This document shows positions 5,518 through 37,880 of a DNA stretch of 64,000 nt, one piece after another. Position 1 is the stretch's first letter. Each line of letters begins with the position of its first letter. The position numbers were made by a program, and so were the translations under genes. The notes beneath the pieces were generated by a model. The model saw nothing but the letters and a program-made list of their open reading frames with translations. It had not been told where the DNA came from and ran no database searches. The stretch comes from Ranitomeya imitator (taxonomy: Eukaryota), in the NCBI RefSeq assembly GCF_032444005.1, contig NC_091284.1, forward strand, positions 39,556,001 through 39,620,000. The letters are read 5' to 3'.

Positions 5518-6645
5518 TATGGCATTGTATCATGGATCTGCACAACATGGATCTCTAACACAGAAATGTTCATGAAGACCTGGCCCTCTATCTAAATAGT
5601 TTAATTGACCCAGGGTTACTTGATGGCTCTTACATACACTGACGTGGAGATTTCAGCAAAATTAGCAAAAATGTCAAACAAGTCAGGTACAAGTAAATGT
5701 TTTGAAGGGATTTCTTTTTTCCTTTGGTTACTATTTTATCCGAGGACACCAACCCTAGTAGTATCCAGTGGTGTTAAGATATAAGACCTCTCACCATCCC
5801 TGTGATCTGCGTTATTTACTACATCAATGGCTCCCTCCACCACGGCAGTAGAGGAGGCAGTTCACTATATCACAGGCACAATATTCCCATGTGCTTGTTA
5901 ATAAATGACCCTGATTAACAGGGTCGCAGCCGGAGGGTCTCTCCACAACATGTGTTTATTGCAGAATGGCTTCATCTGTTTCTTCCCAGGCTCTCTCTCT
6001 CTGCCCTTCTCACCCACTTACTCATGCATTATGGATACAGAACTATAGGAAATTTCCATTCCAATTTTAGCTGTGCATTCCTATTCTTATACTATATCAG
6101 GGTCAGAAATATTCTCAGCCTCTCCTGGACGGTCAAGTTATTTCATAAAGACATCCTTCAAACTATTACACCACCACAGGTGATGCCGTAGATCCCCCAT
6201 TTGTTAGCAGGCCCACCTTGCCGATTTCCTCGTTCTATACTGACATGGACACATGACCAACAACACTTCTAGGATTTAGGGGGCTGACTACAGGGTGTGT
6301 GACTTGACTTGACCAATCTTTTATAGGACCTTTGGGCAATCGAGACCAATGCTAAGCTTGACCCAGGATTTTTTAAGGGGATCTCACTCGTAACAATATG
6401 CCCGAGCAAGAAGTATTTTTGGCTCCTATTAGTGCAAAGACGGTGCTTCTGAGTTCCATTTTCATCATTCATCCCGCCCTTGATGCTTGTCTGCTTCCTA
6501 CCCTGACATTCTGCTCTTCCACCATATTGAGCGAACTCTGCCTGTAATAACCTCCAGACCATGTTCCATAAGTCACATCTTGGTCCTACTCTGAGGTTGT
6601 GCCCAGGAGACATCCGATACAGGGATTAAGTTAGTCTCTCTCTTG

Positions 6646-6986
6646 CAAATATATTGCAACCCAAGGAGTCCTTTACTTCCAGGAAAGCCTTGTCCCAACA
6701 TACACAAGCCCCAATCCAAATATATTGCAACGCAATGGGTCCGTTACTTACAGGAAAGCCTTGTCCTAACATACACAAGCCCCAATCCAAATATATTGCA
6801 ACGCAATGGGTCCGTTACTTACAGGAAAGCCTTGTCCCAACATACACAAGCCCCAATCCAAATATATTGCAACGCAATGGGTCCGTTACTTACAGGAAAG
6901 CCTTGTCCCAACATACACAAGCCCCAATCCAAATATATTGCAACGCAATGGGTCCGTTACTTACAGGAAAGCCTTGTCCCAACATA
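6646..6986. repeat. Minisatellite, 71-bp unit x ~4.8
   Basis: Unit starts at 6646, 6717, 6788, 6859, 6930 (caaatatattgcaacgcaatgggtccgttacttacaggaaagccttgtcccaacatacacaagccccaatc). Confidence 0.95.
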
Positions 6987-7844
6987 AACAGACTTTCCTA
7001 TTATAAGTACAATTTTTTTAAATGAGGTGCAGACACCATATTTTTAAGCCACCAGACACTAACCATGGGTTCAAAAATTTGAGCTTGGAGAGGAGCCATC
7101 TAGGTGCCCATAGCTTCCTCTTACACCTACCATACCTAGAACTTAAGGTCTTCAGATAGAAAGTCCTTGTCAGGAAATATGACGGAATTTCTTATTGTTC
7201 TAATCCCACCACTGACACCAATATGTGACGAACTGGGGGCAACTACCCACCCCCAATTCCTGACAGTCCTGAAGACACAAACTTGTATGACCAGTCAATC
7301 CCGAACTAGAATTGCTGTTAGGTCAGTAAATGAAAATTTAAATTGTCAAGTCAAGCGCAGACGGGAAGGCTTGACCCCATAACATTCATTATTTAGTGAA
7401 CACAACAGGATGCATTAACAGCTGAAGGTTACACCAGAACAACACAAATAGGATATTCCCAATTCCAAACCCATATTGATTAGATGTATGGACATTTACT
7501 ACGAGGGTAGTAGGTGGAGCGGTGGATATGGATCCAGTAGCCAAGGACTGAAGAGCATTTTATGATAATTGTAGATAGAAAGGAGGGGAAGGAAAGAAAT
7601 TATAAGAAACCAAAGCCTAAATATTCATAAGCATTCCATGTCTTGATGGAGTTGGAACCCATTCCACAATTTCCTATGGAGCTCTATGGCTATTTGTTAC
7701 ATCTGCTATAACTAAAACAAACAAAGTCTCCAGAACAGTACAATATGGAGAACAGCAGAGAAATTATAAGAGGTGCCAAGATGTGTTCTACGATTGGCAT
7801 TAATTGTATGGTGTGCTGAGCGCCAGGTGAGAAAATCACCTTCA

Positions 7845-29625: not shown

Positions 29626-29871
29626 GTCAAGGAGCCATAACGGCAGGCATTATTGCCACCGAACCTGGTCTCTTCCCTCTGGTCAGGATGAGATGAAACA
29701 AACCTTTAAGTCCATACACCCTAAAGAGGTTCAACCACTAAATGGCTCAATAAAATAAAAGTATTTTGACTCTTTTTTTATTGCATGTATATTGGGCTAA
29801 CTTTCGACAACGTTTGGCTATTTACAAGACTTTTGTTTCCCCTGTACGTTACTGGCTGCAGAATAAGTTAA

Positions 29872-30665
29872 AGGGAACCTGTCACCCCGTTTTTTCAAGA
29901 TGATATAAAAATAGCGTTAAATAGGGGCAGAGCTGTGCTTTAAATTAGTGTATTTTGGAGCCTTTATTCCCCACCTATGCTGCCGAAATACCTTTGTAAA
30001 GTCGCCGTTTTGGGCTGTCACTCACGCTGGTCAGGTCATATGGGTGTGGTGACAGCGCTGTTTCTCCCCCAGATCTCCGTTGGTGGCGTAGTGGTGTGCG
30101 CATGTCCAGCAGGCGAATCCAGTGCGCAGGTGAAGGAAAAAAGCGCGATCTGCGCTATTCCACGGTTTATTGGTGGGTGCGGCCATCTTTGTGAGGCTGC
30201 GCGTGCGCAGATGGTACTTCTCGGCTTCCCGGGGCTTCAGGAAAATGGCCGCCGCGATCTCCATCTGCGCACGCGCGGCATCCCGCGCCCATTTTCCTGA
30301 AGCCCCGGGAAGCCGAGAAGACCCATCTGCACACGTGCGGCCTCACAAAGATGGCAGCGCCCACCGATAAACGGCTGAATAGCGCAGATCGCGCTTTTTT
30401 CCTTCACCTGCGCACTGGATTCGCCAGTTGGACATGCGCTCACCACTACGCCACAAACGGAGATCTGGGGGAGAAACAGCGCTGTCACCACGCCCATATG
30501 ACCTGACCAGCGTGAGTGACAGCCCAAAACGGCGACTTTACAAAGGTATTTCGGCAGCATAGGTGGGGAATAAAGGCTCCAAAATACACTAATTTAAAGC
30601 ACAGCTCTGCCCCTATTTAACGCTATTTTTATATCATCTTGAAAAAACGGGGTGACAGGTTCCCT
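29872..30665. mobile_element. Palindromic Kolobok/T2-type MITE (TTAA TSD)
   Basis: TTAA|AGGGAACCTGTCACC...GGTGACAGGTTCCCT|TTAA; 377-bp arms, 40-bp spacer (30249-30288). Confidence 0.9.
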
Positions 30666-30881
30666 TTAACTGAAAAACTATCAGTGAGCTCTGGCTCAAT
30701 GGAGTTTGTAACTCTTATTCCTCTTTTTTCCTGAACTCCCGTCTGCTGATTTATGACCAAAGAGGAGTTGTAGTCATAAATCCGCTGAGCAGAGGACAGA
30801 CAAAAGAGTTACAAACTCTTAATGGGAACTCACTCATGGATTCTCAGTTAACTCATTCAGCAGCCAAACGGTGGCAAATTT

Positions 30882-30887
30882 TTTATT
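30882..30887 (-). terminator. Polyadenylation signal of the Harbinger-derived gene
   Basis: AATAAA on the minus strand ~190 nt downstream of the stop at 31080. Confidence 0.55.
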
Positions 30888-31079
30888 ACATTATTTAGTC
30901 CAAAGTACGTGTATATGTAACAAAAAAAAATAATAATGAAAAGTGCACATCTTTAGTGGGTTCCTCTGCAGTCCCCGGTCAGGCAGGGTGGCTTGTTGGT
31001 GTCTCTCCGTCCATGCCCCGCCATCTCGCCCCCTACTATGCTCTTATGAACAGAATTCCAACTTTTCGCTTCTTTGGCC

Positions 31080-31956
31080 TCAGATCTTTTCATTCTGAAA
31101 CGGGATTTCTCCTTGCGGCGACACAAAGTAGCTGGCGAAAGAGTTTCTGACCAACATGCCGCTCACGGGGCCCCGAACCGTGGTCCACGCCACGTCATGG
31201 AGCGGATTACTGAGGATGTCCTCAAAGACGAAGCCGTCCCTGAGGAGCACCAGGTTATGGAGGACGCAGGCGGCCTTGATAATGTCCTGAACGAAGTTCG
31301 CTTCCAGCTGAATGGGGGAGTAGAAGACGCGCCACTTGTTGGCCAAGATGCCGAAAGCGCTGTCTATTGTCCGCCGTGCCCGGATCAGCCGGTAATTAAA
31401 CACCTTCCGGATGGGGGTTATGTTCCTGGTGGGGTAGGGTCTTAAGATATTCTCAGTGAGGCCAAATGCTTCATCGGCTACGAAAACGAAAGGCATGGGA
31501 GGGCGACTCGTGCCGGGCAAAGGCCGACACTCCGGCAAATCTAACCGGCCTTCTTTCATCTTGCGCCCCAGGTGAGACTTCTTAAAAATACTGCAGCTCC
31601 CCGTGGTGCCGTAAGCGCCAACATCTATGGCGATGAACCTGTAGCTGCTGTCCACCAGGGCCAAGAGGACGATGGAGTGTTTGTTCGCGTCCCACTGCTT
31701 GCCTCCGCTGTTGGGGGGCATCTTCATCCGAATGTCTTTGGCATCTAGGGCACCCACACAATTCGGGAAGCTGGTGGTGGCGTGGAAGTCCTCAGCTATC
31801 TTCTGCCAGGTTTCGCCGGAGGGCTCCGGCATGAGCACATCTAGGAGGGTGCCGCAGATGGCTCTGCACGTCTCCCGGACAATCAACCTGATGGTGGCTT
31901 TACCGATGAGGAACCGGAGGTGGAGAGAAGTGAAACTATTGCCCGTAGCCAGGTAC
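31080..31956 (-). CDS. Harbinger transposase-derived (HARBI1/ALP1-like, DDE_Tnp_4-type) protein, last coding exon
   Basis: Acceptor ctccctggctttgcag|G; reads (K)YLATGNSF...FPNCVGALDAKD...VADEAF...FNYRLIRARRTIDSAFGILANKWRVF...ACVLHN to stop; no internal stops. Confidence 0.9.
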
Positions 31957-32754
31957 CTGCAAAGCCAGGGAGACGAGAAGATGGTAAACAGGTTCCTAAC
32001 CCTACGGCGCCGCAGCCTATGTTTCTTTTTTGCACTGTTGTTTTTTCCTCCTTTTTTTTTTTATTTTTCCATCCCCATAGGCTTGTTTTGTGCGGGACAA
32101 GCTGTAGTTGTGATTGACATTAGTCATTTTACCAAATAATGGATATTTTTCCTTATTTTTCAGTACAAGTGCGGCAAAATAAAATGTACTTTGGGTTTCA
32201 TTTTTGTTCATTGTGCGGCAAAAGATTACCTGAAAAATATGATTCTTCGGGTCAGAATGAAAAGATAATTCATTTGTATAGTTTTTTTTTGTTTATCTAT
32301 GTAGTACTTAATAGTGCAAGACTACTGGACTGTAGTATATAGAGGGAATGACAAATATTGAAAAATGAAAACTATATTGAGGCAGGCGCCGATCCCACCT
32401 ATTGGCTTCCATGCCAAAAATATGCCATAAATTTCTGAGATGGGACTGACCCTTTAAAGACGTTTCCTGATTTTAGAAAACCCTTGGCTAGAGTTCGTTA
32501 TATAAAGAAAAAAAAACAAAAACAAAAAAAAAAAGCGCATTTCTCACCCTCCTATGGTCCAGCACTGAATCTCGGCCAATACACCTGGCGTCAGTTATTG
32601 TCTGCAGCCAGTCACTGATCTCAGCGGCTCTTAGCGGCTGCTGCTGGCAACTCGATGAGCTCAGTGATTGGCTGCAGAGCTGTTGATATGACGTCGGCGC
32701 TGCAGACAATAACAGACAACGGAAACTCAGAGTTGGACCCGGGAAGGTGAGTGA

Positions 32755-33135
32755 GGGTATGTGCACACGTCAGGATTTTTTCCCGACAAATTCCTGAGAA
32801 TTCTGCCAGAAATCCGCGTGCTTTTTTCGCGCGGATTTCTCGTAGAATTTGCGCGGATTTTTTGCTGATTTTTTGCGGTTTTTTTTTTCTTTTCCTGAAT
32901 GACCTTTTTGATAGGAAATCCGCAAAAAATCCGGAAAAAGATTGAGCATGTCCGGATTTTTTGCGGGATGCGTTTTTTTTGCAGAAAAAAACGCTAACAT
33001 CTGCACAAAAAATGCGGAATGCATTCTAAATGATAGGATGCATAATGTTAGCGTTTTTTTACCGGATTTATAGCGTTTTTATGGCGAAATTCCGCAAAAA
33101 AAAAACGCTAAAAATCCTGACGTGTGCACATACCC
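32755..33135. mobile_element. PIF/Harbinger MITE (GGGTATGTGCACACG TIR) in the intron of the Harbinger-derived gene
   Basis: 15-bp+ TIRs; flanks TGA/TAA (imperfect 3-bp TSD); termini shared with 53063-53399 and 55478-55822. Confidence 0.85.
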
Positions 33136-33466
33136 TAAGATCTAGTTTTTTTGTTTGTTTTTTTTTTTAAATGTTGCAGCCACAAGGACAGGGGTTTTGC
33201 GAAGCTGGAAAACCGCTTTAACTTATTATTTTCTGTTCCTATCTGAGGCGGTCTTCCTAGATGAAAATCGGAATCGAGACAGAAGCGCCATATTCTGGGA
33301 TATTTCTGAATTTAGGACTCTTTTGGTAATCAATGACCTAAAGAACGCGGTTGCTTTCTCCCAATAATAGCGCCAGGTTGTAGGAGCTGAGCTGCATTAC
33401 CACACACAACCTGTAGGCAGGGGTGGCGCTGTTTCTGGAAGTAAAATGTGTTAGGATAGAACATAC

Positions 33467-33780
33467 TTAATAGTCACACAGAGCCGCTCCTCCGGGGAGA
33501 TCGCCAGCCGCATCTTCGTGTCGCTCCTGATGAGTGCGGGCCGCAGATGCTTCAGCAGCTCATCGAATGTTCCTATGGACATTTTAAAATAATCAAAAAA
33601 CCTTTTGGGGGATTTTCGCAAATCTCCGTACCGGAGGTGAAACTGTCCCTTGGAGAATCGCTGGCTGGTCAGCGGGTGCACCCAGTAGTTCCGCACCGTC
33701 TCTCTTTTCCGCTTCTTCTGTCTGGATACGACATAGCCGAGTAACAGCAGCCAAAAATGGATCTCGTGCTCTGTGGTCAT
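33467..33780 (-). CDS. Harbinger transposase-derived protein, first coding exon
   Basis: gcacagccATG; MTTEHE...QKKRKR..YWVHP...YFKMS..TFDELL...DTKMRLAISPEERLCVTI; donor AA|GTATGT (phase 2) joins the next exon in frame to give 396 aa; upstream acceptor ttttaccttttag at 33801 implies a further 5'UTR exon. Confidence 0.85.
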
Positions 33781-34083
33781 GGCTGTGCCCGGAGTAGGGG
33801 CTAAAAGGTAAAAAAAATATATATATTTAATATAAAAATGAAAGTCTGAACTGATTTCTAATGAGAACTTCTAAGACTGAGTTTACTGAGAATCAGTCAG
33901 TGAGCTCGCTATGACGGACTGATAGGAGAGCTTGTGCCTCTTATCTGTTATTTTTTTCTGACCTTCTCCCAGCTGATTTATGACCTCAGACCACATCATA
34001 ATGTGCAAGGAAACAAAGAGACTGTAAACACTTTGCGTTTTTGCTCCTTTTTTTTTTAAAATGCAATTTTAAGTTGCTTATTA

Positions 34084-34163
34084 GGCCATGTTCACACGTT
34101 GCATTTTTGCTTTGTTTTTTTTTTTTTTGCCTGCAGAAATAAACGCGACGTGTGAACATAGCC
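34084..34163. mobile_element. 80-bp Harbinger-type mini MITE
   Basis: TTA|GGCCATGTTCACACG...CGTGTGAACATAGCC|TAA. Confidence 0.6.
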
Positions 34164-34808
34164 TAAAAGTCAAACGGTGCAATATTTTTAATGAAACCCA
34201 ATTGCAAGAATGATTTTTAGCCCAAAATATATGTGTTCCTAAAAATTGCCCCTTTAGGTAGATTTGCTTTTCTGGTGCGTGACCTGGGAAATACGTGACA
34301 TATTAAATTTACATTAGGAATCTGACAATTTGAGTATGGATTTTGGGCACAATAAATTCAGGTGGGATTCACCGGACATCAGATCTGATCTTGCGTCATA
34401 TCCACAGGCACCAGAGATTAGGGTCTTTATCATGACTTGCGCCATATATAGAGGGTAACCTAGGAATAATACCGCTATAAGTCGTGCTGTATCCATGGAG
34501 AGGTGCCGCGATGCCCCCATGCATGCACACGGCAGGGTCATACTTTTTTGGGGTACACGATTGTACAAATATTTTCGCCCCTTTATTTTTATCCGCGGTT
34601 CCAGCTGTCGTGTAGTCCCTATAACCGTACAGCGGCCCCCCTATAGGGCGACTGCATCTGCTGTGCCTGTCAATCCACCGAATGGCCTGAAACTTCCAGA
34701 ATGACACCAGCTCCTCCCAGTAACCAGCACTGTCCCAGTATATACACAGCCGTCCTCCTGCCAGAAACCAGTACCGACACCGCTCTGATCCTGCACCGAC
34801 CTAGCACC

Positions 34809-34829
34809 ATGCCGGATTTCAATTGGAAG
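34809..34829 (+). CDS. SMIM11: SMIM11 first coding exon (MPDFNWK)
   Basis: accATG context; NWK followed by donor AAG|GTAATT matches the MNWK| exon of mammalian SMIM11; phase 0 fits the next exon. Confidence 0.7.
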
Positions 34830-36957
34830 GTAATTGATCAATCATTAATAATGCATACATACATATATCTTATTTTTTGGCTATGGAGATGTAACGGAGC
34901 CGAGTTTGTCATTTGGCTTGACTCCTTTTATGCAGTCTTACATAGGACTGCTGGAAAAGCTTAGCTGCACTTATCACAATGTATAAACAGTGCATTCCCC
35001 AAAGTGACAAACTCAGCTCTGCTACATCTGTACCTTGCATTATGCAGCAATACAGACGCAATTCAGCCCCTTACCTGCATGCAAGGCCTCCTAGTCTTCT
35101 GCAGCAGCTTCTCTCTGTGCAAGACTAGCAGAAGACAATACAAGGAAGGTGTCTGCAGTGCACAATCCAGCTATATTCTATTATTCTGCTTCATGCCCAC
35201 CACACACCTCACTCCGTGACTCTCCTGCAGTCATCATCAGACATAAAAACTAAACCTGAATAGTAGAAACGATGTGAGAAATGTCTGTACTAAGGAATGC
35301 TGTATGTCGGCCATTTTTCCGAAGACCATTCCATTACGATCGACTCGGGGAAAGTGACTCCAGAGCTGGAGACAAGTTGTCAGCCGGTACGGGCGACCTC
35401 TAGCGTACAGAGTGAAAAAATGGTGGTATTATATGACATTTTGGTTAAAATCTGTCACTAGGAACCAGACAGGCTCTCACTGGAGTAAAGCAAATAACTG
35501 ATGTCATGTTTCTTTCCCCCTCAACACAAAAAAGGGAACATTAAAAGAGCAAAAAGGGACAGAGTGAAAGTCATATATAATCCTGTCACGATCTGCGCCC
35601 CTCACTTGTCACCTTGCATAGTAAACAATGGCCGCGACGTGTGACTTGTTACAGTCGCCAACCATGTTGTCCCAAGCTCGTGCATCATCATCGGGACTGT
35701 CATATGGTTCTGTTGATGTGACCCCATATGGACAACGCATCACTCAGCTGCCAATCCTTTGGTGGTTCATTTGGATTTGTAAATGGCGCAAGCACCATTC
35801 CCATATTTACAAAGTTTTTGGATGGACATTTTACCTTTTTTAGGAGCATGTGATATTTATTAAGTGAGCAAAAAAAGGGGAGAAGCCAGCGCAGCCTAAG
35901 GTTAAGACGCAATACATAAAGTGCAAATGCACATATTAATTTCTAACTGTATTTTCAAAATGAGACATTTAGCAAACAATTGATCAATTCTTTGAGCCAC
36001 CCCGCCTCTTCACGGCAATCTCATATTGGGGCAGTCCTACACTACGTTTTTTATATTTGCTGTGCCATAAAGGCCTCCTAAATGAACTAAATGCAAGACC
36101 ACATTAAAAACATGCTGTACCTGGAGCATACACTGAGTCACCCCCATGGCGCCAGAGTAGGCAAGCGAGGATAAAGGTTGACCAGGTCCAGACAGACATT
36201 TCGGATCCAACCTCCACACTGCCCATCTAGAACCACAGATGAAGAGTGAAACAGGCTGAGGCACAGGTGCATAATTAAACAAAGCCTTTATTAAATTTAT
36301 TAAGTGCCATTGTTCATCAGTCGGCGTATCTCCCTAAAACATGCAATAAAAGTCCTAAAAATGTCACATGTACTAGAGATGAGTGGATCGATTTGTGGAA
36401 CTTAAGTCTAGGTCAGTGGTACCTTGCCGCTAGACAGGAGGCCCATGAATCTTTTTCCTTCCGGTGCGACTATTGATTAGCCGGGACTGGTGCGATGTTG
36501 TCTGTGCTTCGCGTTGCACAAATAACGTTACGCCATCTCCGACAAATCAAAATAACTTCCGGGGACACCGGAAGGTAAGAGATTTGCAGGCCTTCCATAC
36601 AGCCACGAGGTACCAATGACCTGGACGCTGGACGAGAGTCCCACAAATTGATCCGTTCACGCCTAGTATATACCAAAAAATGTGATAAAGAAAAAAAATT
36701 CAATAACTAAAGGCCGGCTTCACATTTCTAACGGTCCAACTACGGACCGCAATGTCCTGACCAGCTGCAGGTCTCTTGACCCAGACTCAACATGTAGACA
36801 TCGTGGTCCGTAATCTCAAAATAAATGTCAGGCATAAGCTACAAAAAAAAACCTAAACCCCTGAAAAATCTAACTTGACCAATTTATTTATTTTTGCCTG
36901 ATTTCATCCACATGGACATGTGGGTTATGACAACCACTACAGGTGTTGAAGGTTTAA

Positions 36958-37587: not shown

Positions 37588-37697
37588 TTTAATCTGCCAA
37601 CCGTAGATCAACTATTCAGGACCCTCAATTAGCTGAAGAAGGGGATGTAAGTGTAGGCTGCCACCAATTCTCAGTGTCTATCATTTTCTGGTTCCAG

Positions 37698-37880
37698 GCG
37701 CTGGACAACTTCCCGCTGCTCATGTACATTTTAGCAGCGAAGACTTTGCTGTTGTGTTTGGCTTTCGCTGGTGTGAAGATTTACCAAAGTAAAAAAATTG
37801 AAGCCAAACTAAAGCGTGAGCGAGAAGAGAAACTGAGGAAGGCAGCAGAGAAGGAAGAAACTGATAAGAAGGATGACTGA
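37698..37880 (+). CDS. SMIM11: SMIM11 (FAM165 family) second coding exon
   Basis: Acceptor ttttctggttccag|; ALDNFPLLMYILAAKTLLLCLAFAGVKIYQSKKIEAKLKREREEK... matches the SMIM11 TM helix and charged tail; donor GAG|GTAAGT at 37885. Confidence 0.92.
   Translation, partial: ALDNFPLLMYILAAKTLLLCLAFAGVKIYQSKKIEAKLKREREEKLRKAAEKEETDKKDD

What the first reader, a model, noticed from the sequence alone, without database searches (positions are those of the whole stretch)
30882..33800. Candidate domesticated PIF/Harbinger transposase gene: intact, spliced, with altered catalytic motifs
Seen: two coding exons with canonical splice sites join in frame to an uninterrupted 396-aa Harbinger-type transposase. 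It has a good ATG context, a spliced 5'UTR (acceptor at 33801), a QKKRKR NLS-like stretch and AATAAA ~190 nt after the stop. The exon is GC/CpG-rich and undecayed, whereas every other TE ORF in the window carries stops or frameshifts. I see no flanking TIR/TSD and no partner Myb/SANT gene. Established: Harbinger transposases use GA(I/L)DG(T/K)H...D...R..(I/V)E..FG, autonomous elements carry a second Myb gene, and domesticated copies (HARBI1, plant ALP1/HDP1) act in chromatin complexes. Here the motifs read GALDAKD (D176), VADEAF (D266) and RRTIDSAFG (E>D at 303), and the usual NYK and SD positions are lost. Inference: a lineage-specific, probably catalytically dead, co-opted transposase; the best candidate for an undescribed system in this window.
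Basis: partly seen in the sequence, partly recalled or inferred. Interest (0 to 1): 0.85.

Follow-up and report, generated by a model that had tools for sequence, protein, structure and literature searches.

The report
Frog gene born from Harbinger transposase
This is a real, expressed host gene that descends from a PIF/Harbinger "jumping gene" enzyme; it has sat next to SMIM11 in most modern frogs for well over 100 million years under strong selection with a rebuilt active site, and no paper I could find describes it.

Summary
On the minus strand, two coding exons (33780-33467 and 31956-31080) join in frame to a 396-aa DDE_Tnp_4 protein. It is identical to a Ranitomeya imitator RefSeq "uncharacterized protein". 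RNA contigs confirm the coding intron and the 5'UTR intron; the 5'UTR exon lies inside SMIM11 intron 1.

The interpretation, a domesticated transposase, is supported.
- One orthologue per genome turned up in at least 15 neobatrachian frogs, at 79-94% identity and mostly 396 aa.
- It lies head-to-head with SMIM11 in six species of Hyloidea and Ranoidea.
- It is absent from the 10 kb upstream of SMIM11 in Spea, Xenopus laevis and Ascaphus.
- Pairwise dN/dS is 0.045-0.064, with no indels.
- In the clade's stem, sites nearly invariant in 116 relatives changed and then mostly froze: G177A, H179D, D225C/S and catalytic E303D. D176 and D266 are kept.

- A flanking inverted repeat does exist, but it is two copies of a palindromic MITE, not TIRs.
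- The coding intron was inherited from the transposon.
- "Catalytically dead" is unproven, because an acidic D-D-D triad remains.

This is a new member of a known kind, comparable to HARBI1, ALP1 and the insect PIF-like genes. The function is inferred only.

The parts
35075..35283 (-). Non-coding first exon (5'UTR) of the transposase-derived gene. It lies inside intron 1 of SMIM11 on the opposite strand. The 5' limit is only the end of the longest RNA contig.
   Evidence: RNA contigs join 35075 to 33800 (skip of 1274 nt, GT..AG on the minus strand) in runs X1, X5 and X15. The X15 contig reaches 35283. The donor context is CAG|GTAAGG.
33801..35074 (-). 5'UTR intron. It contains SMIM11 exon 1 on the other strand and one MITE copy (33875-33984).
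   Evidence: Joint table; sequence.
33467..33800 (-). Exon 2: 20 nt of 5'UTR plus CDS codons 1-104 and two bases of codon 105 (ATG at 33780). It encodes an N-terminal hydrophobic helix, the basic QKKRKR cluster and the helical N-terminal domain.
   Evidence: The exon is 86% identical at DNA level to E. coqui and 80% to Pyxicephalus, while the flanks do not align.
31957..33466 (-). Coding intron, phase 2, 1510 nt. It carries a MITE with perfect 27-nt terminal inverted repeats at 32754-33136.
   Evidence: The junction is seen in RNA contigs of X5, X6 and X15. The same position and phase occurs in E. coqui, Pyxicephalus and Engystomops, and in X. laevis P0008 and X. tropicalis P0005. MITE: pair I8.
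31080..31956 (-). Exon 3 CDS (codons 105-396 plus the stop): the helix-turn-helix region and the DDE_Tnp_4 RNase H-like domain.
   Evidence: Pfam DDE_Tnp_4 at 9.7e-21. The AlphaFold2 model has mean pLDDT 85.6 with beta1 171-180, beta4 262-265 and helix 286-312.
31743..31745 (-). Codon of D176, the first catalytic Asp, retained. Its neighbours are changed: G177A and H179D.
   Evidence: Clade D 20/20, others D 114/116. Position 177: clade A 20/20, others G 113/116. Position 179: clade D 20/20, others H 111/116.
31473..31475 (-). Codon of D266, the second catalytic Asp, retained.
   Evidence: Clade D 20/20, others D 116/116.
31362..31364 (-). Codon of D303, at the position of the catalytic Glu, here Asp.
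   Evidence: Clade D 20/20, others E 116/116.
30640..31079 (-). 3'UTR. AATAAA is at 30887-30882, but the RNA contigs continue to roughly 30640-30690, through a MITE copy.
   Evidence: sequence, table 8 (records 1, 8 and 15 extend 10-60 nt beyond 30700).
30664..30858 (.). Palindromic MITE copy in or just beyond the 3'UTR. One arm pairs with the copy at 33875-33984, which gives the appearance of TIRs around the gene.
   Evidence: (I7, I10, I12). It does not align to the E. coqui, Pyxicephalus or Engystomops loci. High-depth chimeric joints in RNA contigs show that many copies exist elsewhere (table 5c).
33875..33984 (.). Second, partial copy of the same MITE family, inside the 5'UTR intron.
34757..34830 (+). 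SMIM11 (FAM165) exon 1, with its ATG at 34809. It is transcribed divergently and overlaps the other gene's first intron.
   Evidence: tblastx to the FAM165 genes of E. coqui and Pyxicephalus. An RNA contig covers 34757-34830 and then continues into the last-exon sequence (loose end at 34830).
37680..37830 (+). SMIM11 last coding exon.
   Evidence: Its 40-aa translation finds SMIM11 of many vertebrates at E about 1e-12, Pfam PF14981.

Best explanation
This is a host gene derived from the transposase of a PIF/Harbinger DNA transposon.

Origin (shown). One transposon copy, whose transposase gene already carried the phase-2 intron, inserted beside SMIM11 in the ancestor of neobatrachian frogs. That was after the split from spadefoot toads, pipids and Ascaphus. 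The copy lost its ends and its mobility, and it came to be transcribed from a start site inside SMIM11 intron 1, head-to-head with SMIM11. It has been kept since as a single-copy 396-aa gene under strong purifying selection.

Active site (shown). On the stem of the clade the region around the active site was rebuilt: G177A, H179D, D225C/S, S226C, the NYK block replaced, and catalytic E303D. It was then largely frozen. The RNase H-like fold, the N-terminal helical/HTH region and a basic NLS-like cluster were kept.

Mechanism (inferred, about 50%). The protein no longer cuts and pastes DNA. It acts in the nucleus as a DNA- or chromatin-associated adaptor, probably together with a Myb/SANT/MADF-type partner encoded elsewhere in the genome. 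This is how ALP1-ALP2, HDP1-HDP2 and HARBI1-NAIF1 work. A retained but altered metal-dependent nuclease activity is the main alternative (about 30%).
For: Gene model and domain.

Expression and splicing in the source species.

Identity: the protein is identical to R. imitator XP_069616885.1, named only 'uncharacterized protein'.

Orthologues: one contig each in E. coqui, Pristimantis, Dendropsophus, Ranitomeya, Anomaloglossus, two Bufo species, Engystomops, Leptodactylus, Pyxicephalus, Rana temporaria, Mantella, Gastrophryne, Hyperolius and Pseudophryne.

Synteny: FAM165/SMIM11 is the divergent neighbour in E. coqui, Pyxicephalus, Hyperolius, R. temporaria, Engystomops and the window.

Absence outside Neobatrachia: tblastn finds no trace in the 10 kb upstream of SMIM11 in Spea, X. 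laevis or Ascaphus.

Selection: dN/dS is 0.045-0.064 with dS 0.75 to about 2. All four CDS are 1191 nt with an identical intron phase. Only the exons align between species.

Tree: the clade has SH-aLRT 100 and a stem of 0.38. Internal branches are short, and the grouping, as far as it is resolved, follows the species tree.

Clade-specific fixed substitutions at family-invariant sites. The Pfam score drops from 110.6 bits in the TE-like P0008 to 73.5 bits.

Fold: pLDDT 85.6. The nearest predicted structures are ALP1-like, ALP1 and HARBI1, at TM 0.66-0.73.

Contrast: the multi-copy relative P0008 has at least 6 loci on different X. laevis chromosomes at 90% identity or more.
Against: No functional data exist. 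The mechanism rests on analogy with other domesticated Harbinger transposases.

All three catalytic positions are still acidic and invariant, so catalysis is not excluded.

No Myb/MADF partner was found. No conserved coding block lies within 10 kb downstream in three species, and the rest of the genome could not be searched.

Single-copy status rests on annotated proteins and one window, not on a whole-genome search.

Synteny was not checked in Pseudophryne, and in Gastrophryne no FAM165 gene was called within 10 kb.

The X. laevis upstream flank contains 2 kb of N.

The Xenopus 'harbinger transposase derived 1-like' gene is sister to the clade (SH-aLRT 94), so the domestication itself could be older than the SMIM11 insertion.
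Confidence: 0.85

Rival explanations
1. Same domesticated gene, but still an enzyme. The D176-D266-D303 triad binds metal and the protein is a nuclease or recombinase with altered specificity, as proposed but never shown for HARBI1.
For: All three catalytic positions are acidic and invariant in 20/20 clade members. E>D is a conservative change. On general knowledge, DDD triads are functional in other transposase superfamilies. The RNase H-like core is predicted with high confidence.
Against: Residues that are 95-100% conserved in 116 relatives and flank the triad are replaced: H179, D225, N194-Y195-K196 and C304. Invariance of the triad is not specific evidence, because the whole protein evolves at dN/dS 0.05.
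Confidence: 0.3
2. The domestication is older than Neobatrachia. The Xenopus 'harbinger transposase derived 1-like' gene (P0005), which has canonical motifs and lies at a different locus, is the true orthologue. The neobatrachian copy was relocated or duplicated next to SMIM11 and only then lost the canonical active site.
For: P0005 is sister to the clade (SH-aLRT 94). It shares the intron position. It is itself conserved between X. tropicalis and X. laevis at 90% identity or more and has a cDNA clone. No P0005-like second gene appeared among the neobatrachian hits.
Against: There is no shared synteny within 10 kb. The shared intron is also present in a multi-copy TE-like relative, so it is uninformative. 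P0005 has a long branch (0.46) and an unrelated N-terminal extension of roughly 70-95 aa. Independent domestication of related elements is common for PIF transposases (PMC9710019).
Confidence: 0.25
3. It is an autonomous or recently active Harbinger transposon copy that happens to be intact, with the inverted repeats at 30773-30858 and 33875-33984 as its ends.
For: An inverted repeat about 80% complementary brackets the coding region. The ORF is intact.
Against: The left repeat is a complete palindromic element in its own right (I12). The right one lies in the 5'UTR intron. Neither aligns to the orthologous loci. RNA contigs show that the repeat is a dispersed family. The gene sits at the same locus in frogs whose synonymous sites are saturated.
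Confidence: 0.01

Closest known systems
HARBI1 (vertebrate Harbinger transposase-derived 1)
   Same: It is a single-copy host gene derived from a PIF/Harbinger transposase, with a DDE_Tnp_4 fold (Foldseek TM 0.66-0.72 by query, 0.74-0.81 by hit). It is conserved by purifying selection, its biochemical function is unknown, and a nuclear role is expected.
   Different: Only 16-18% identical in the structural alignment, so this is an independent domestication. HARBI1 dates to the base of jawed vertebrates and keeps the canonical DDE (PMC9392472). This gene is restricted to neobatrachian frogs, is 396 aa instead of about 349, and has E>D plus loss of H179, D225 and NYK. Frogs have a separate true HARBI1 (X. 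laevis Q5U538). HARBI1 has a known partner, NAIF1; no partner is known here.
Arabidopsis ALP1 / ALP1-like and HDP1
   Same: These are the best structural matches (E 2e-20 and 2.7e-19, TM 0.71-0.73). They are domesticated Harbinger transposases that act as chromatin-complex subunits with a Myb-like partner (PMC8616336, PMC5339849). They are the model for the proposed mechanism.
   Different: They are plant genes from independent events, at 19-20% identity. PRC2 or histone acetyltransferase association is untested here.
Insect PIF-like genes (DPLG1-7, APLG1/2, LPLG1/2, BPLG1/2)
   Same: The same operational signature applies: conserved synteny, dN/dS about 0.04-0.2, lost TIRs and TSDs, and transcription (PMC9710019). 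Transposase-only domestications without an adjacent MADF gene are documented there too.
   Different: Different host phylum and independent events. Several insect cases keep the MADF gene next door, whereas none is adjacent here.
Xenopus 'harbinger transposase derived 1-like' (P0005, NP_001335467)
   Same: It is the closest sequence outside the clade (57-60% identity), sister in the tree, and has the same intron position. It is conserved between X. tropicalis and X. laevis.
   Different: It has canonical GALDGKH, D225 and VECAFG motifs. It carries an N-terminal extension of roughly 70-95 aa, spans more exons over 7.3 kb, and is not next to SMIM11.
Multi-copy frog Harbinger transposases annotated 'ALP1-like' (e.g. 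X. laevis P0008 family)
   Same: 45-57% identical, about the same length, the same intron position and phase, and the same N-terminal architecture.
   Different: These occur at many near-identical loci on different chromosomes and have all canonical motifs with a DDE_Tnp_4 score of 110 bits. They behave as transposon copies, not as an orthologous gene.

Membership tests
PIF/Harbinger transposase superfamily (descent) | DDE_Tnp_4 domain above the Pfam gathering score | tested here: met
   74.5 bits against a cut-off of 24.8, E 9.7e-21; 73.5 bits for the full-length protein.
PIF/Harbinger transposase superfamily (descent) | RNase H-like fold with acidic residues on beta1, after beta4 and on the following long helix | tested here: met
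   AlphaFold2 model at pLDDT 85.6, with strands 171-180 and 262-265 and helix 286-312 carrying D176, D266 and D303. Foldseek hits ALP1, HARBI1 and IS5-family transposases. This is a prediction only; no solved relative exists.
Active PIF/Harbinger transposon | Canonical D-D-E triad with the GA(I/L)DG(T/K)H and R..VE..FG motifs | tested here: not met
   E303D, G177A and H179D are in 20/20 clade members, against E 116/116, G 113/116 and H 111/116 in relatives.
Active PIF/Harbinger transposon | Terminal inverted repeats with 3-bp (TWA) target-site duplication bounding the element | tested here: not met
   The only flanking inverted repeat is two copies of a palindromic MITE. One is in the 5'UTR intron, and neither is conserved at orthologous loci.
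Active PIF/Harbinger transposon | Second gene for a Myb/SANT/MADF DNA-binding protein within the element | tested here: not met
   tblastx shows no conserved coding block between the window's 31 kb downstream and the 10 kb downstream in E. coqui, Pyxicephalus and Engystomops. A fast-evolving small ORF could escape this test.
Active PIF/Harbinger transposon | Multiple dispersed near-identical copies | tested here: not met
   Each species contributes one contig to the 90% clusters. The next-best R. imitator proteins are 46% identical or less. There is no second locus in the window. A whole-genome search was not possible.
Domesticated (exapted) transposase gene, criteria as used in PMC9710019 | Orthologues at a syntenic position in distantly related species | tested here: met
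   It is head-to-head with FAM165/SMIM11 in 3 hyloid and 3 ranoid species, with ATP5PO beyond SMIM11 in Engystomops.
Domesticated (exapted) transposase gene, criteria as used in PMC9710019 | Purifying selection on the coding sequence | tested here: met
   Pairwise dN/dS is 0.045-0.064 in all six comparisons and in every protein segment where dS could be estimated (0.02-0.12). Third-position identity is 48-70% against 92-95% at second positions.
Domesticated (exapted) transposase gene, criteria as used in PMC9710019 | Transcription and correct splicing | tested here: met
   Both junctions are seen in RNA-run contigs of the source species. Full-length ORFs occur on short (1.6-2.9 kb) contigs from Logan assemblies of public runs for ranoid orthologues, consistent with spliced transcripts, since the genomic loci carry introns of 1 kb or more.
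HARBI1 orthologue | Orthology to the jawed-vertebrate HARBI1 gene (about 349 aa, canonical DDE) | tested here: not met
   16-18% identity to HARBI1 of six vertebrates, including X. laevis, which has its own HARBI1. The tree places the gene among frog and insect 'ALP1-like' transposases.
ALP1/HDP1-type chromatin-complex subunit (function) | Physical association with a Myb-like partner and a chromatin-modifying complex | not testable with these tools
   This needs IP-MS or two-hybrid experiments. Only fold similarity is shown.

The most novel reading that the evidence does not exclude
The rebuilt pocket is not decay but a new active site. On this reading, the invariant D-D-D triad plus the invariant new residues A177, D179, H198 and C226 were fixed in the neobatrachian ancestor. 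The protein would be a frog-specific nuclease or DNA-processing enzyme with a new substrate. Alternatively it would be a sensor or repressor that binds the ends of the still-abundant Harbinger elements and MITEs of frog genomes and so controls them.
Probability: 0.2. Interest if true: 0.7.

Novelty: new member of a known kind. Interest (0 to 1): 0.55.

Why it matters
The papers read here name HARBI1 as the only transposase-derived PIF/Harbinger gene known in vertebrates (PMC9392472). This would be a second, independent and much younger vertebrate case. It is shared by the clade that contains the great majority of living frogs, and its birth is well bracketed: absent from the SMIM11 locus in Spea, Xenopus and Ascaphus, present at it in six hyloid and ranoid species.

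It shows a burst of change at otherwise invariant active-site residues followed by very strong constraint. That makes it a clean natural experiment on what a transposase fold is reused for. Its TE-like relatives are still multi-copy in frog genomes, which makes a role in transposon control testable.

It also flags two further frog genes as probable sister cases: the Xenopus 'harbi1-like' gene and a ranoid gene mis-named as an SLX4IP isoform. On the practical side, RefSeq names all of these 'uncharacterized protein', and the annotation could be improved.

Tried and rejected
- TIR hypothesis. The repeat finder gave two inverted-repeat pairs bracketing the gene. Alignment, pattern searches, cross-species blastn and RNA-contig joints showed they are two copies of a dispersed palindromic MITE, so I rejected them as transposon ends.
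- Adjacent Myb/MADF partner. tblastx of downstream flanks across four species found no conserved coding block.
- Rfam scan of the whole window: nothing at gathering thresholds.
- PDB by sequence and by fold: no significant solved relative. The best is the ISCth4 transposase at E 0.017 and TM 0.33, so no experimental structure anchors the active-site reading.
- Splicing as evidence of domestication: rejected, because the intron is shared with a multi-copy relative.
- Earlier notes of this scan near the locus concerned unrelated hammerhead-like motifs and were not used.
- Pseudophryne isoform X2 could not be located by exact look-up.
- Literature searches found no description of this gene. The library does not cover all journals, so absence is not proof.
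Full report
**1. What is in the sequence**

On the minus strand an ATG at 33780, in a good context (G at -3), opens an exon that ends at 33467 before a GTATGT donor. A polypyrimidine tract and AG at 31958-31957 precede a second coding exon, 31956-31080. Joined, they give 1191 nt and 396 codons with no internal stop.

The second exon carries a DDE_Tnp_4 domain, E 9.7e-21 and 74.5 bits against a gathering score of 24.8. The exons have 52-56% GC and CpG o/e 0.81-0.95, against 44% and 0.57 for the window. AATAAA lies at 30887-30882, 193 nt after the stop.

**2. Transcript evidence**

I laid contigs of four public runs that hold this locus on 30700-36600. Three are labelled RNA and one has no stated type. 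They show two junctions:
- The coding junction, a skip of 1510 nt with GT..AG on the minus strand, in X5, X6 and X15.
- A second intron, 33801-35074, in X1, X5 and X15. It joins the coding exon to a non-coding first exon at 35075 to at least 35283.

The first exon lies beyond SMIM11 exon 1, which is on the plus strand at 34757-34830 with its ATG at 34809. The two genes are therefore head-to-head and overlapping: the transposase-derived gene starts inside SMIM11 intron 1.

Minor isoforms exist. One is an alternative acceptor at about 32226. The other is RefSeq isoform X2, which lacks residues 51-105. Contigs run about 200 nt past the AATAAA, so the 3' end is not settled.

**3. Identity and relatives**

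The protein is 100% identical to Ranitomeya imitator XP_069616885.1, "uncharacterized protein isoform X1", so the window is from that species or a very close relative.

A search of 5.8 billion proteins, with expansion of the 90% clusters, gives one orthologue per genome. Each is on a single chromosome-scale contig and most are 396 aa. The species are:
- Hyloidea: E. coqui, Pristimantis, Dendropsophus, Ranitomeya, Anomaloglossus, Bufo bufo, B. gargarizans, Engystomops and Leptodactylus.
- Ranoidea: Pyxicephalus, Rana temporaria, Mantella, Gastrophryne and Hyperolius.
- Myobatrachidae: Pseudophryne.

Full-length identity to the window protein is 80-94%. The next proteins are Xenopus genes at 52-60%, and then hundreds of frog and insect "ALP1-like" transposases at 42-53%.

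In a maximum-likelihood tree of 65 proteins the 21 clade rows form one group (SH-aLRT 100) on a long stem (0.38). Internal branches are very short. Hyloids, ranoids and Pseudophryne separate as in the species tree, although several forks are unresolved.

**4. Synteny and age**

FAM165/SMIM11 is the divergently oriented upstream neighbour in E. coqui, Pyxicephalus, Hyperolius, R. temporaria and Engystomops, as it is in the window. ATP5PO follows SMIM11 in Engystomops and Spea.

Between species only the two coding exons and the SMIM11 exon align. Introns and flanks do not.

In Spea bombifrons, Xenopus laevis and Ascaphus truei, no gene is called in the 10 kb upstream of SMIM11. tblastn with the 396-aa protein finds nothing there, with the caveat that the X. 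laevis flank has 2 kb of N.

The simplest reading is one insertion beside SMIM11 on the neobatrachian stem. On my own recollection of published frog timetrees, which I did not check here, that is well over 100 million years ago.

**5. Selection**

The CDS from the window, E. coqui, Engystomops and Pyxicephalus are all 1191 nt with the intron at the same codon and phase. Pairwise dN/dS is 0.045-0.064 by both NG86 and ML. dS runs from 0.75 to saturation at about 2. Every protein segment where dS could be estimated lies in the range 0.02-0.12. This constraint is strong by comparison with the dN/dS values reported for insect PIF-like genes (0.038 and 0.18 in PMC9710019).

**6. The active site**

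I aligned 20 clade members against 116 relatives. D176 and D266 are kept. The catalytic Glu is Asp in 20/20 clade members, against Glu in 116/116 relatives.

Several other sites that are nearly invariant in the family were also replaced:

| Position | Relatives | Clade |
|---|---|---|
| 177 | G 113/116 | A 20/20 |
| 179 | H 111/116 | D 20/20 |
| 194 | N 111/116 | D 17/20 |
| 195 | Y 107/116 | A/S/T |
| 196 | K 112/116 | S/N/G |
| 198 | Y/F | H 20/20 |
| 225 | D 116/116 | C/S/N |
| 226 | S 94/116 | C 20/20 |
| 304 | C 111/116 | S/G |

The Pfam score falls from 110.6 bits in the TE-like P0008 to 73.5 bits.

The AlphaFold2 model (pLDDT 85.6, pTM 0.81) keeps the RNase H-like order of elements, with the three acidic residues on beta1, after beta4 and on the long helix.

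The pocket was therefore remodelled once and then largely frozen. Canonical transposase chemistry is unlikely, but "dead" is not demonstrated.

**7. What is not evidence of domestication**

The coding intron occurs at the same codon and phase in X. tropicalis P0005. It also occurs in X. laevis P0008, which belongs to a family with at least six loci at 90% identity or more on different chromosomes. The intron was therefore inherited from the transposon.

**8. The flanking inverted repeat**

The repeat finder reports 30826-30858 against 33875-33907 and 30773-30805 against 33952-33984, together about 110 nt at about 80% complementarity. The following points show that these are MITE insertions and not the ends of the ancestral element:
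- The left copy is itself a complete palindrome, about 30664-30858 (I12).
- The right copy sits in the 5'UTR intron.
- Neither aligns to the orthologous loci.
- RNA contigs contain high-depth chimeric joints between the two arms, as expected for a dispersed repeat family (table 5c).

**9. Partner gene**

No conserved coding block lies within 10 kb downstream in three other species when compared with 31 kb of the window. There is therefore no adjacent co-domesticated Myb/MADF gene. A partner elsewhere in the genome cannot be excluded. Transposase-only domestications are documented in insects (PMC9710019).

**10. Comparison with known genes**

Foldseek against Swiss-Prot models puts Arabidopsis ALP1-like and ALP1 first, then HARBI1 of six vertebrates, at TM 0.66-0.73 and 16-20% identity. 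Bacterial IS5-family transposases follow. No solved structure matches.

The gene is not HARBI1, because frogs have their own HARBI1 and identity is below 20%. It meets all the operational criteria used for domesticated PIF transposases: synteny, purifying selection, lost TE hallmarks and transcription (PMC9710019).

PMC9392472 names HARBI1 as the only transposase-derived Harbinger gene known in vertebrates. Four full-text searches found no description of this frog gene.

**11. Mechanism and verdict**

Shown:
- Descent from a PIF/Harbinger transposase.
- Fixation at one locus.
- Expression and splicing.
- Strong constraint.
- A remodelled active site.

Inferred:
- Nuclear localisation, from the conserved basic cluster.
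- Loss of transposition.
- Action as a DNA or chromatin adaptor with a Myb-type partner, by analogy with ALP1-ALP2, HDP1-HDP2 and HARBI1-NAIF1 (PMC8616336, PMC5339849, PMC9392472).

The main rival is a retained, re-specified nuclease.

A separate open point is whether the Xenopus "harbinger transposase derived 1-like" gene reflects the same, older domestication or a parallel one. That gene is sister in the tree, has canonical motifs and sits at another locus.

Verdict: this is a genuine and apparently undescribed gene, and a new member of a well-known kind. Interest is moderate.

Noticed in passing
window 29866-30671: A large near-perfect inverted repeat: two 387-nt arms, 96% complementary, with a 32-nt loop, at up to about 60% GC. 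It sits immediately beyond the 3' end of the gene, and mirror-image ORFs appear on both strands. It may be a foldback-type element; its nature is not determined.
   Followed up: no
window 32754-33136: A MITE with perfect 27-nt terminal inverted repeats inside the coding intron. Its sequence reaches word depths of 200-2000 in the RNA-run contigs, so the family is very abundant and transcribed, or embedded in many transcripts.
   Followed up: partly
window 34757-35283: The first exon of the transposase-derived gene (minus strand, 35075-35283) lies inside intron 1 of SMIM11 (plus strand, exon 1 at 34757-34830). The two genes have overlapping divergent transcription units. In Pyxicephalus the two start codons are only about 500 nt apart.
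   Followed up: partly
proteins P0011, P0014 and cluster (Rana temporaria, Lithobates pipiens, Aquarana, Mantella, Pyxicephalus, Hyperolius): A second Harbinger-transposase-like protein of 397-398 aa is conserved at 90% identity or more across ranoid frogs, one contig each. RefSeq names it 'protein SLX4IP isoform X1/X2/X3'. It keeps D, D and E but has GKR instead of GKH. It is probably another domesticated transposase, mis-named because it lies in or beside SLX4IP.
   Followed up: partly
L003:10001-17314 (Xenopus tropicalis) and X. laevis LOC108695554: 'Harbinger transposase derived 1-like' is conserved between the two Xenopus species at 90% identity or more. It has canonical catalytic motifs and an acidic N-terminal extension, spans more exons, and is not next to SMIM11. 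It is sister to the neobatrachian clade in the tree.
   Followed up: partly
window 31927-32226 and RefSeq isoform X2 (P0122): Two minor splice forms exist. One contig uses an alternative acceptor near 32226, retaining 270 nt of intron. The annotated isoform uses an internal donor and lacks residues 51-105.
   Followed up: no
L008 (Xenopus laevis, 6001-7481): A member of the multi-copy 'ALP1-like' family sits about 3.4 kb from an olfactory-receptor-type 7TM gene. No inverted repeat of 14 nt or more was found within 3 kb on either side, so this copy's transposon ends were not identified.
   Followed up: partly
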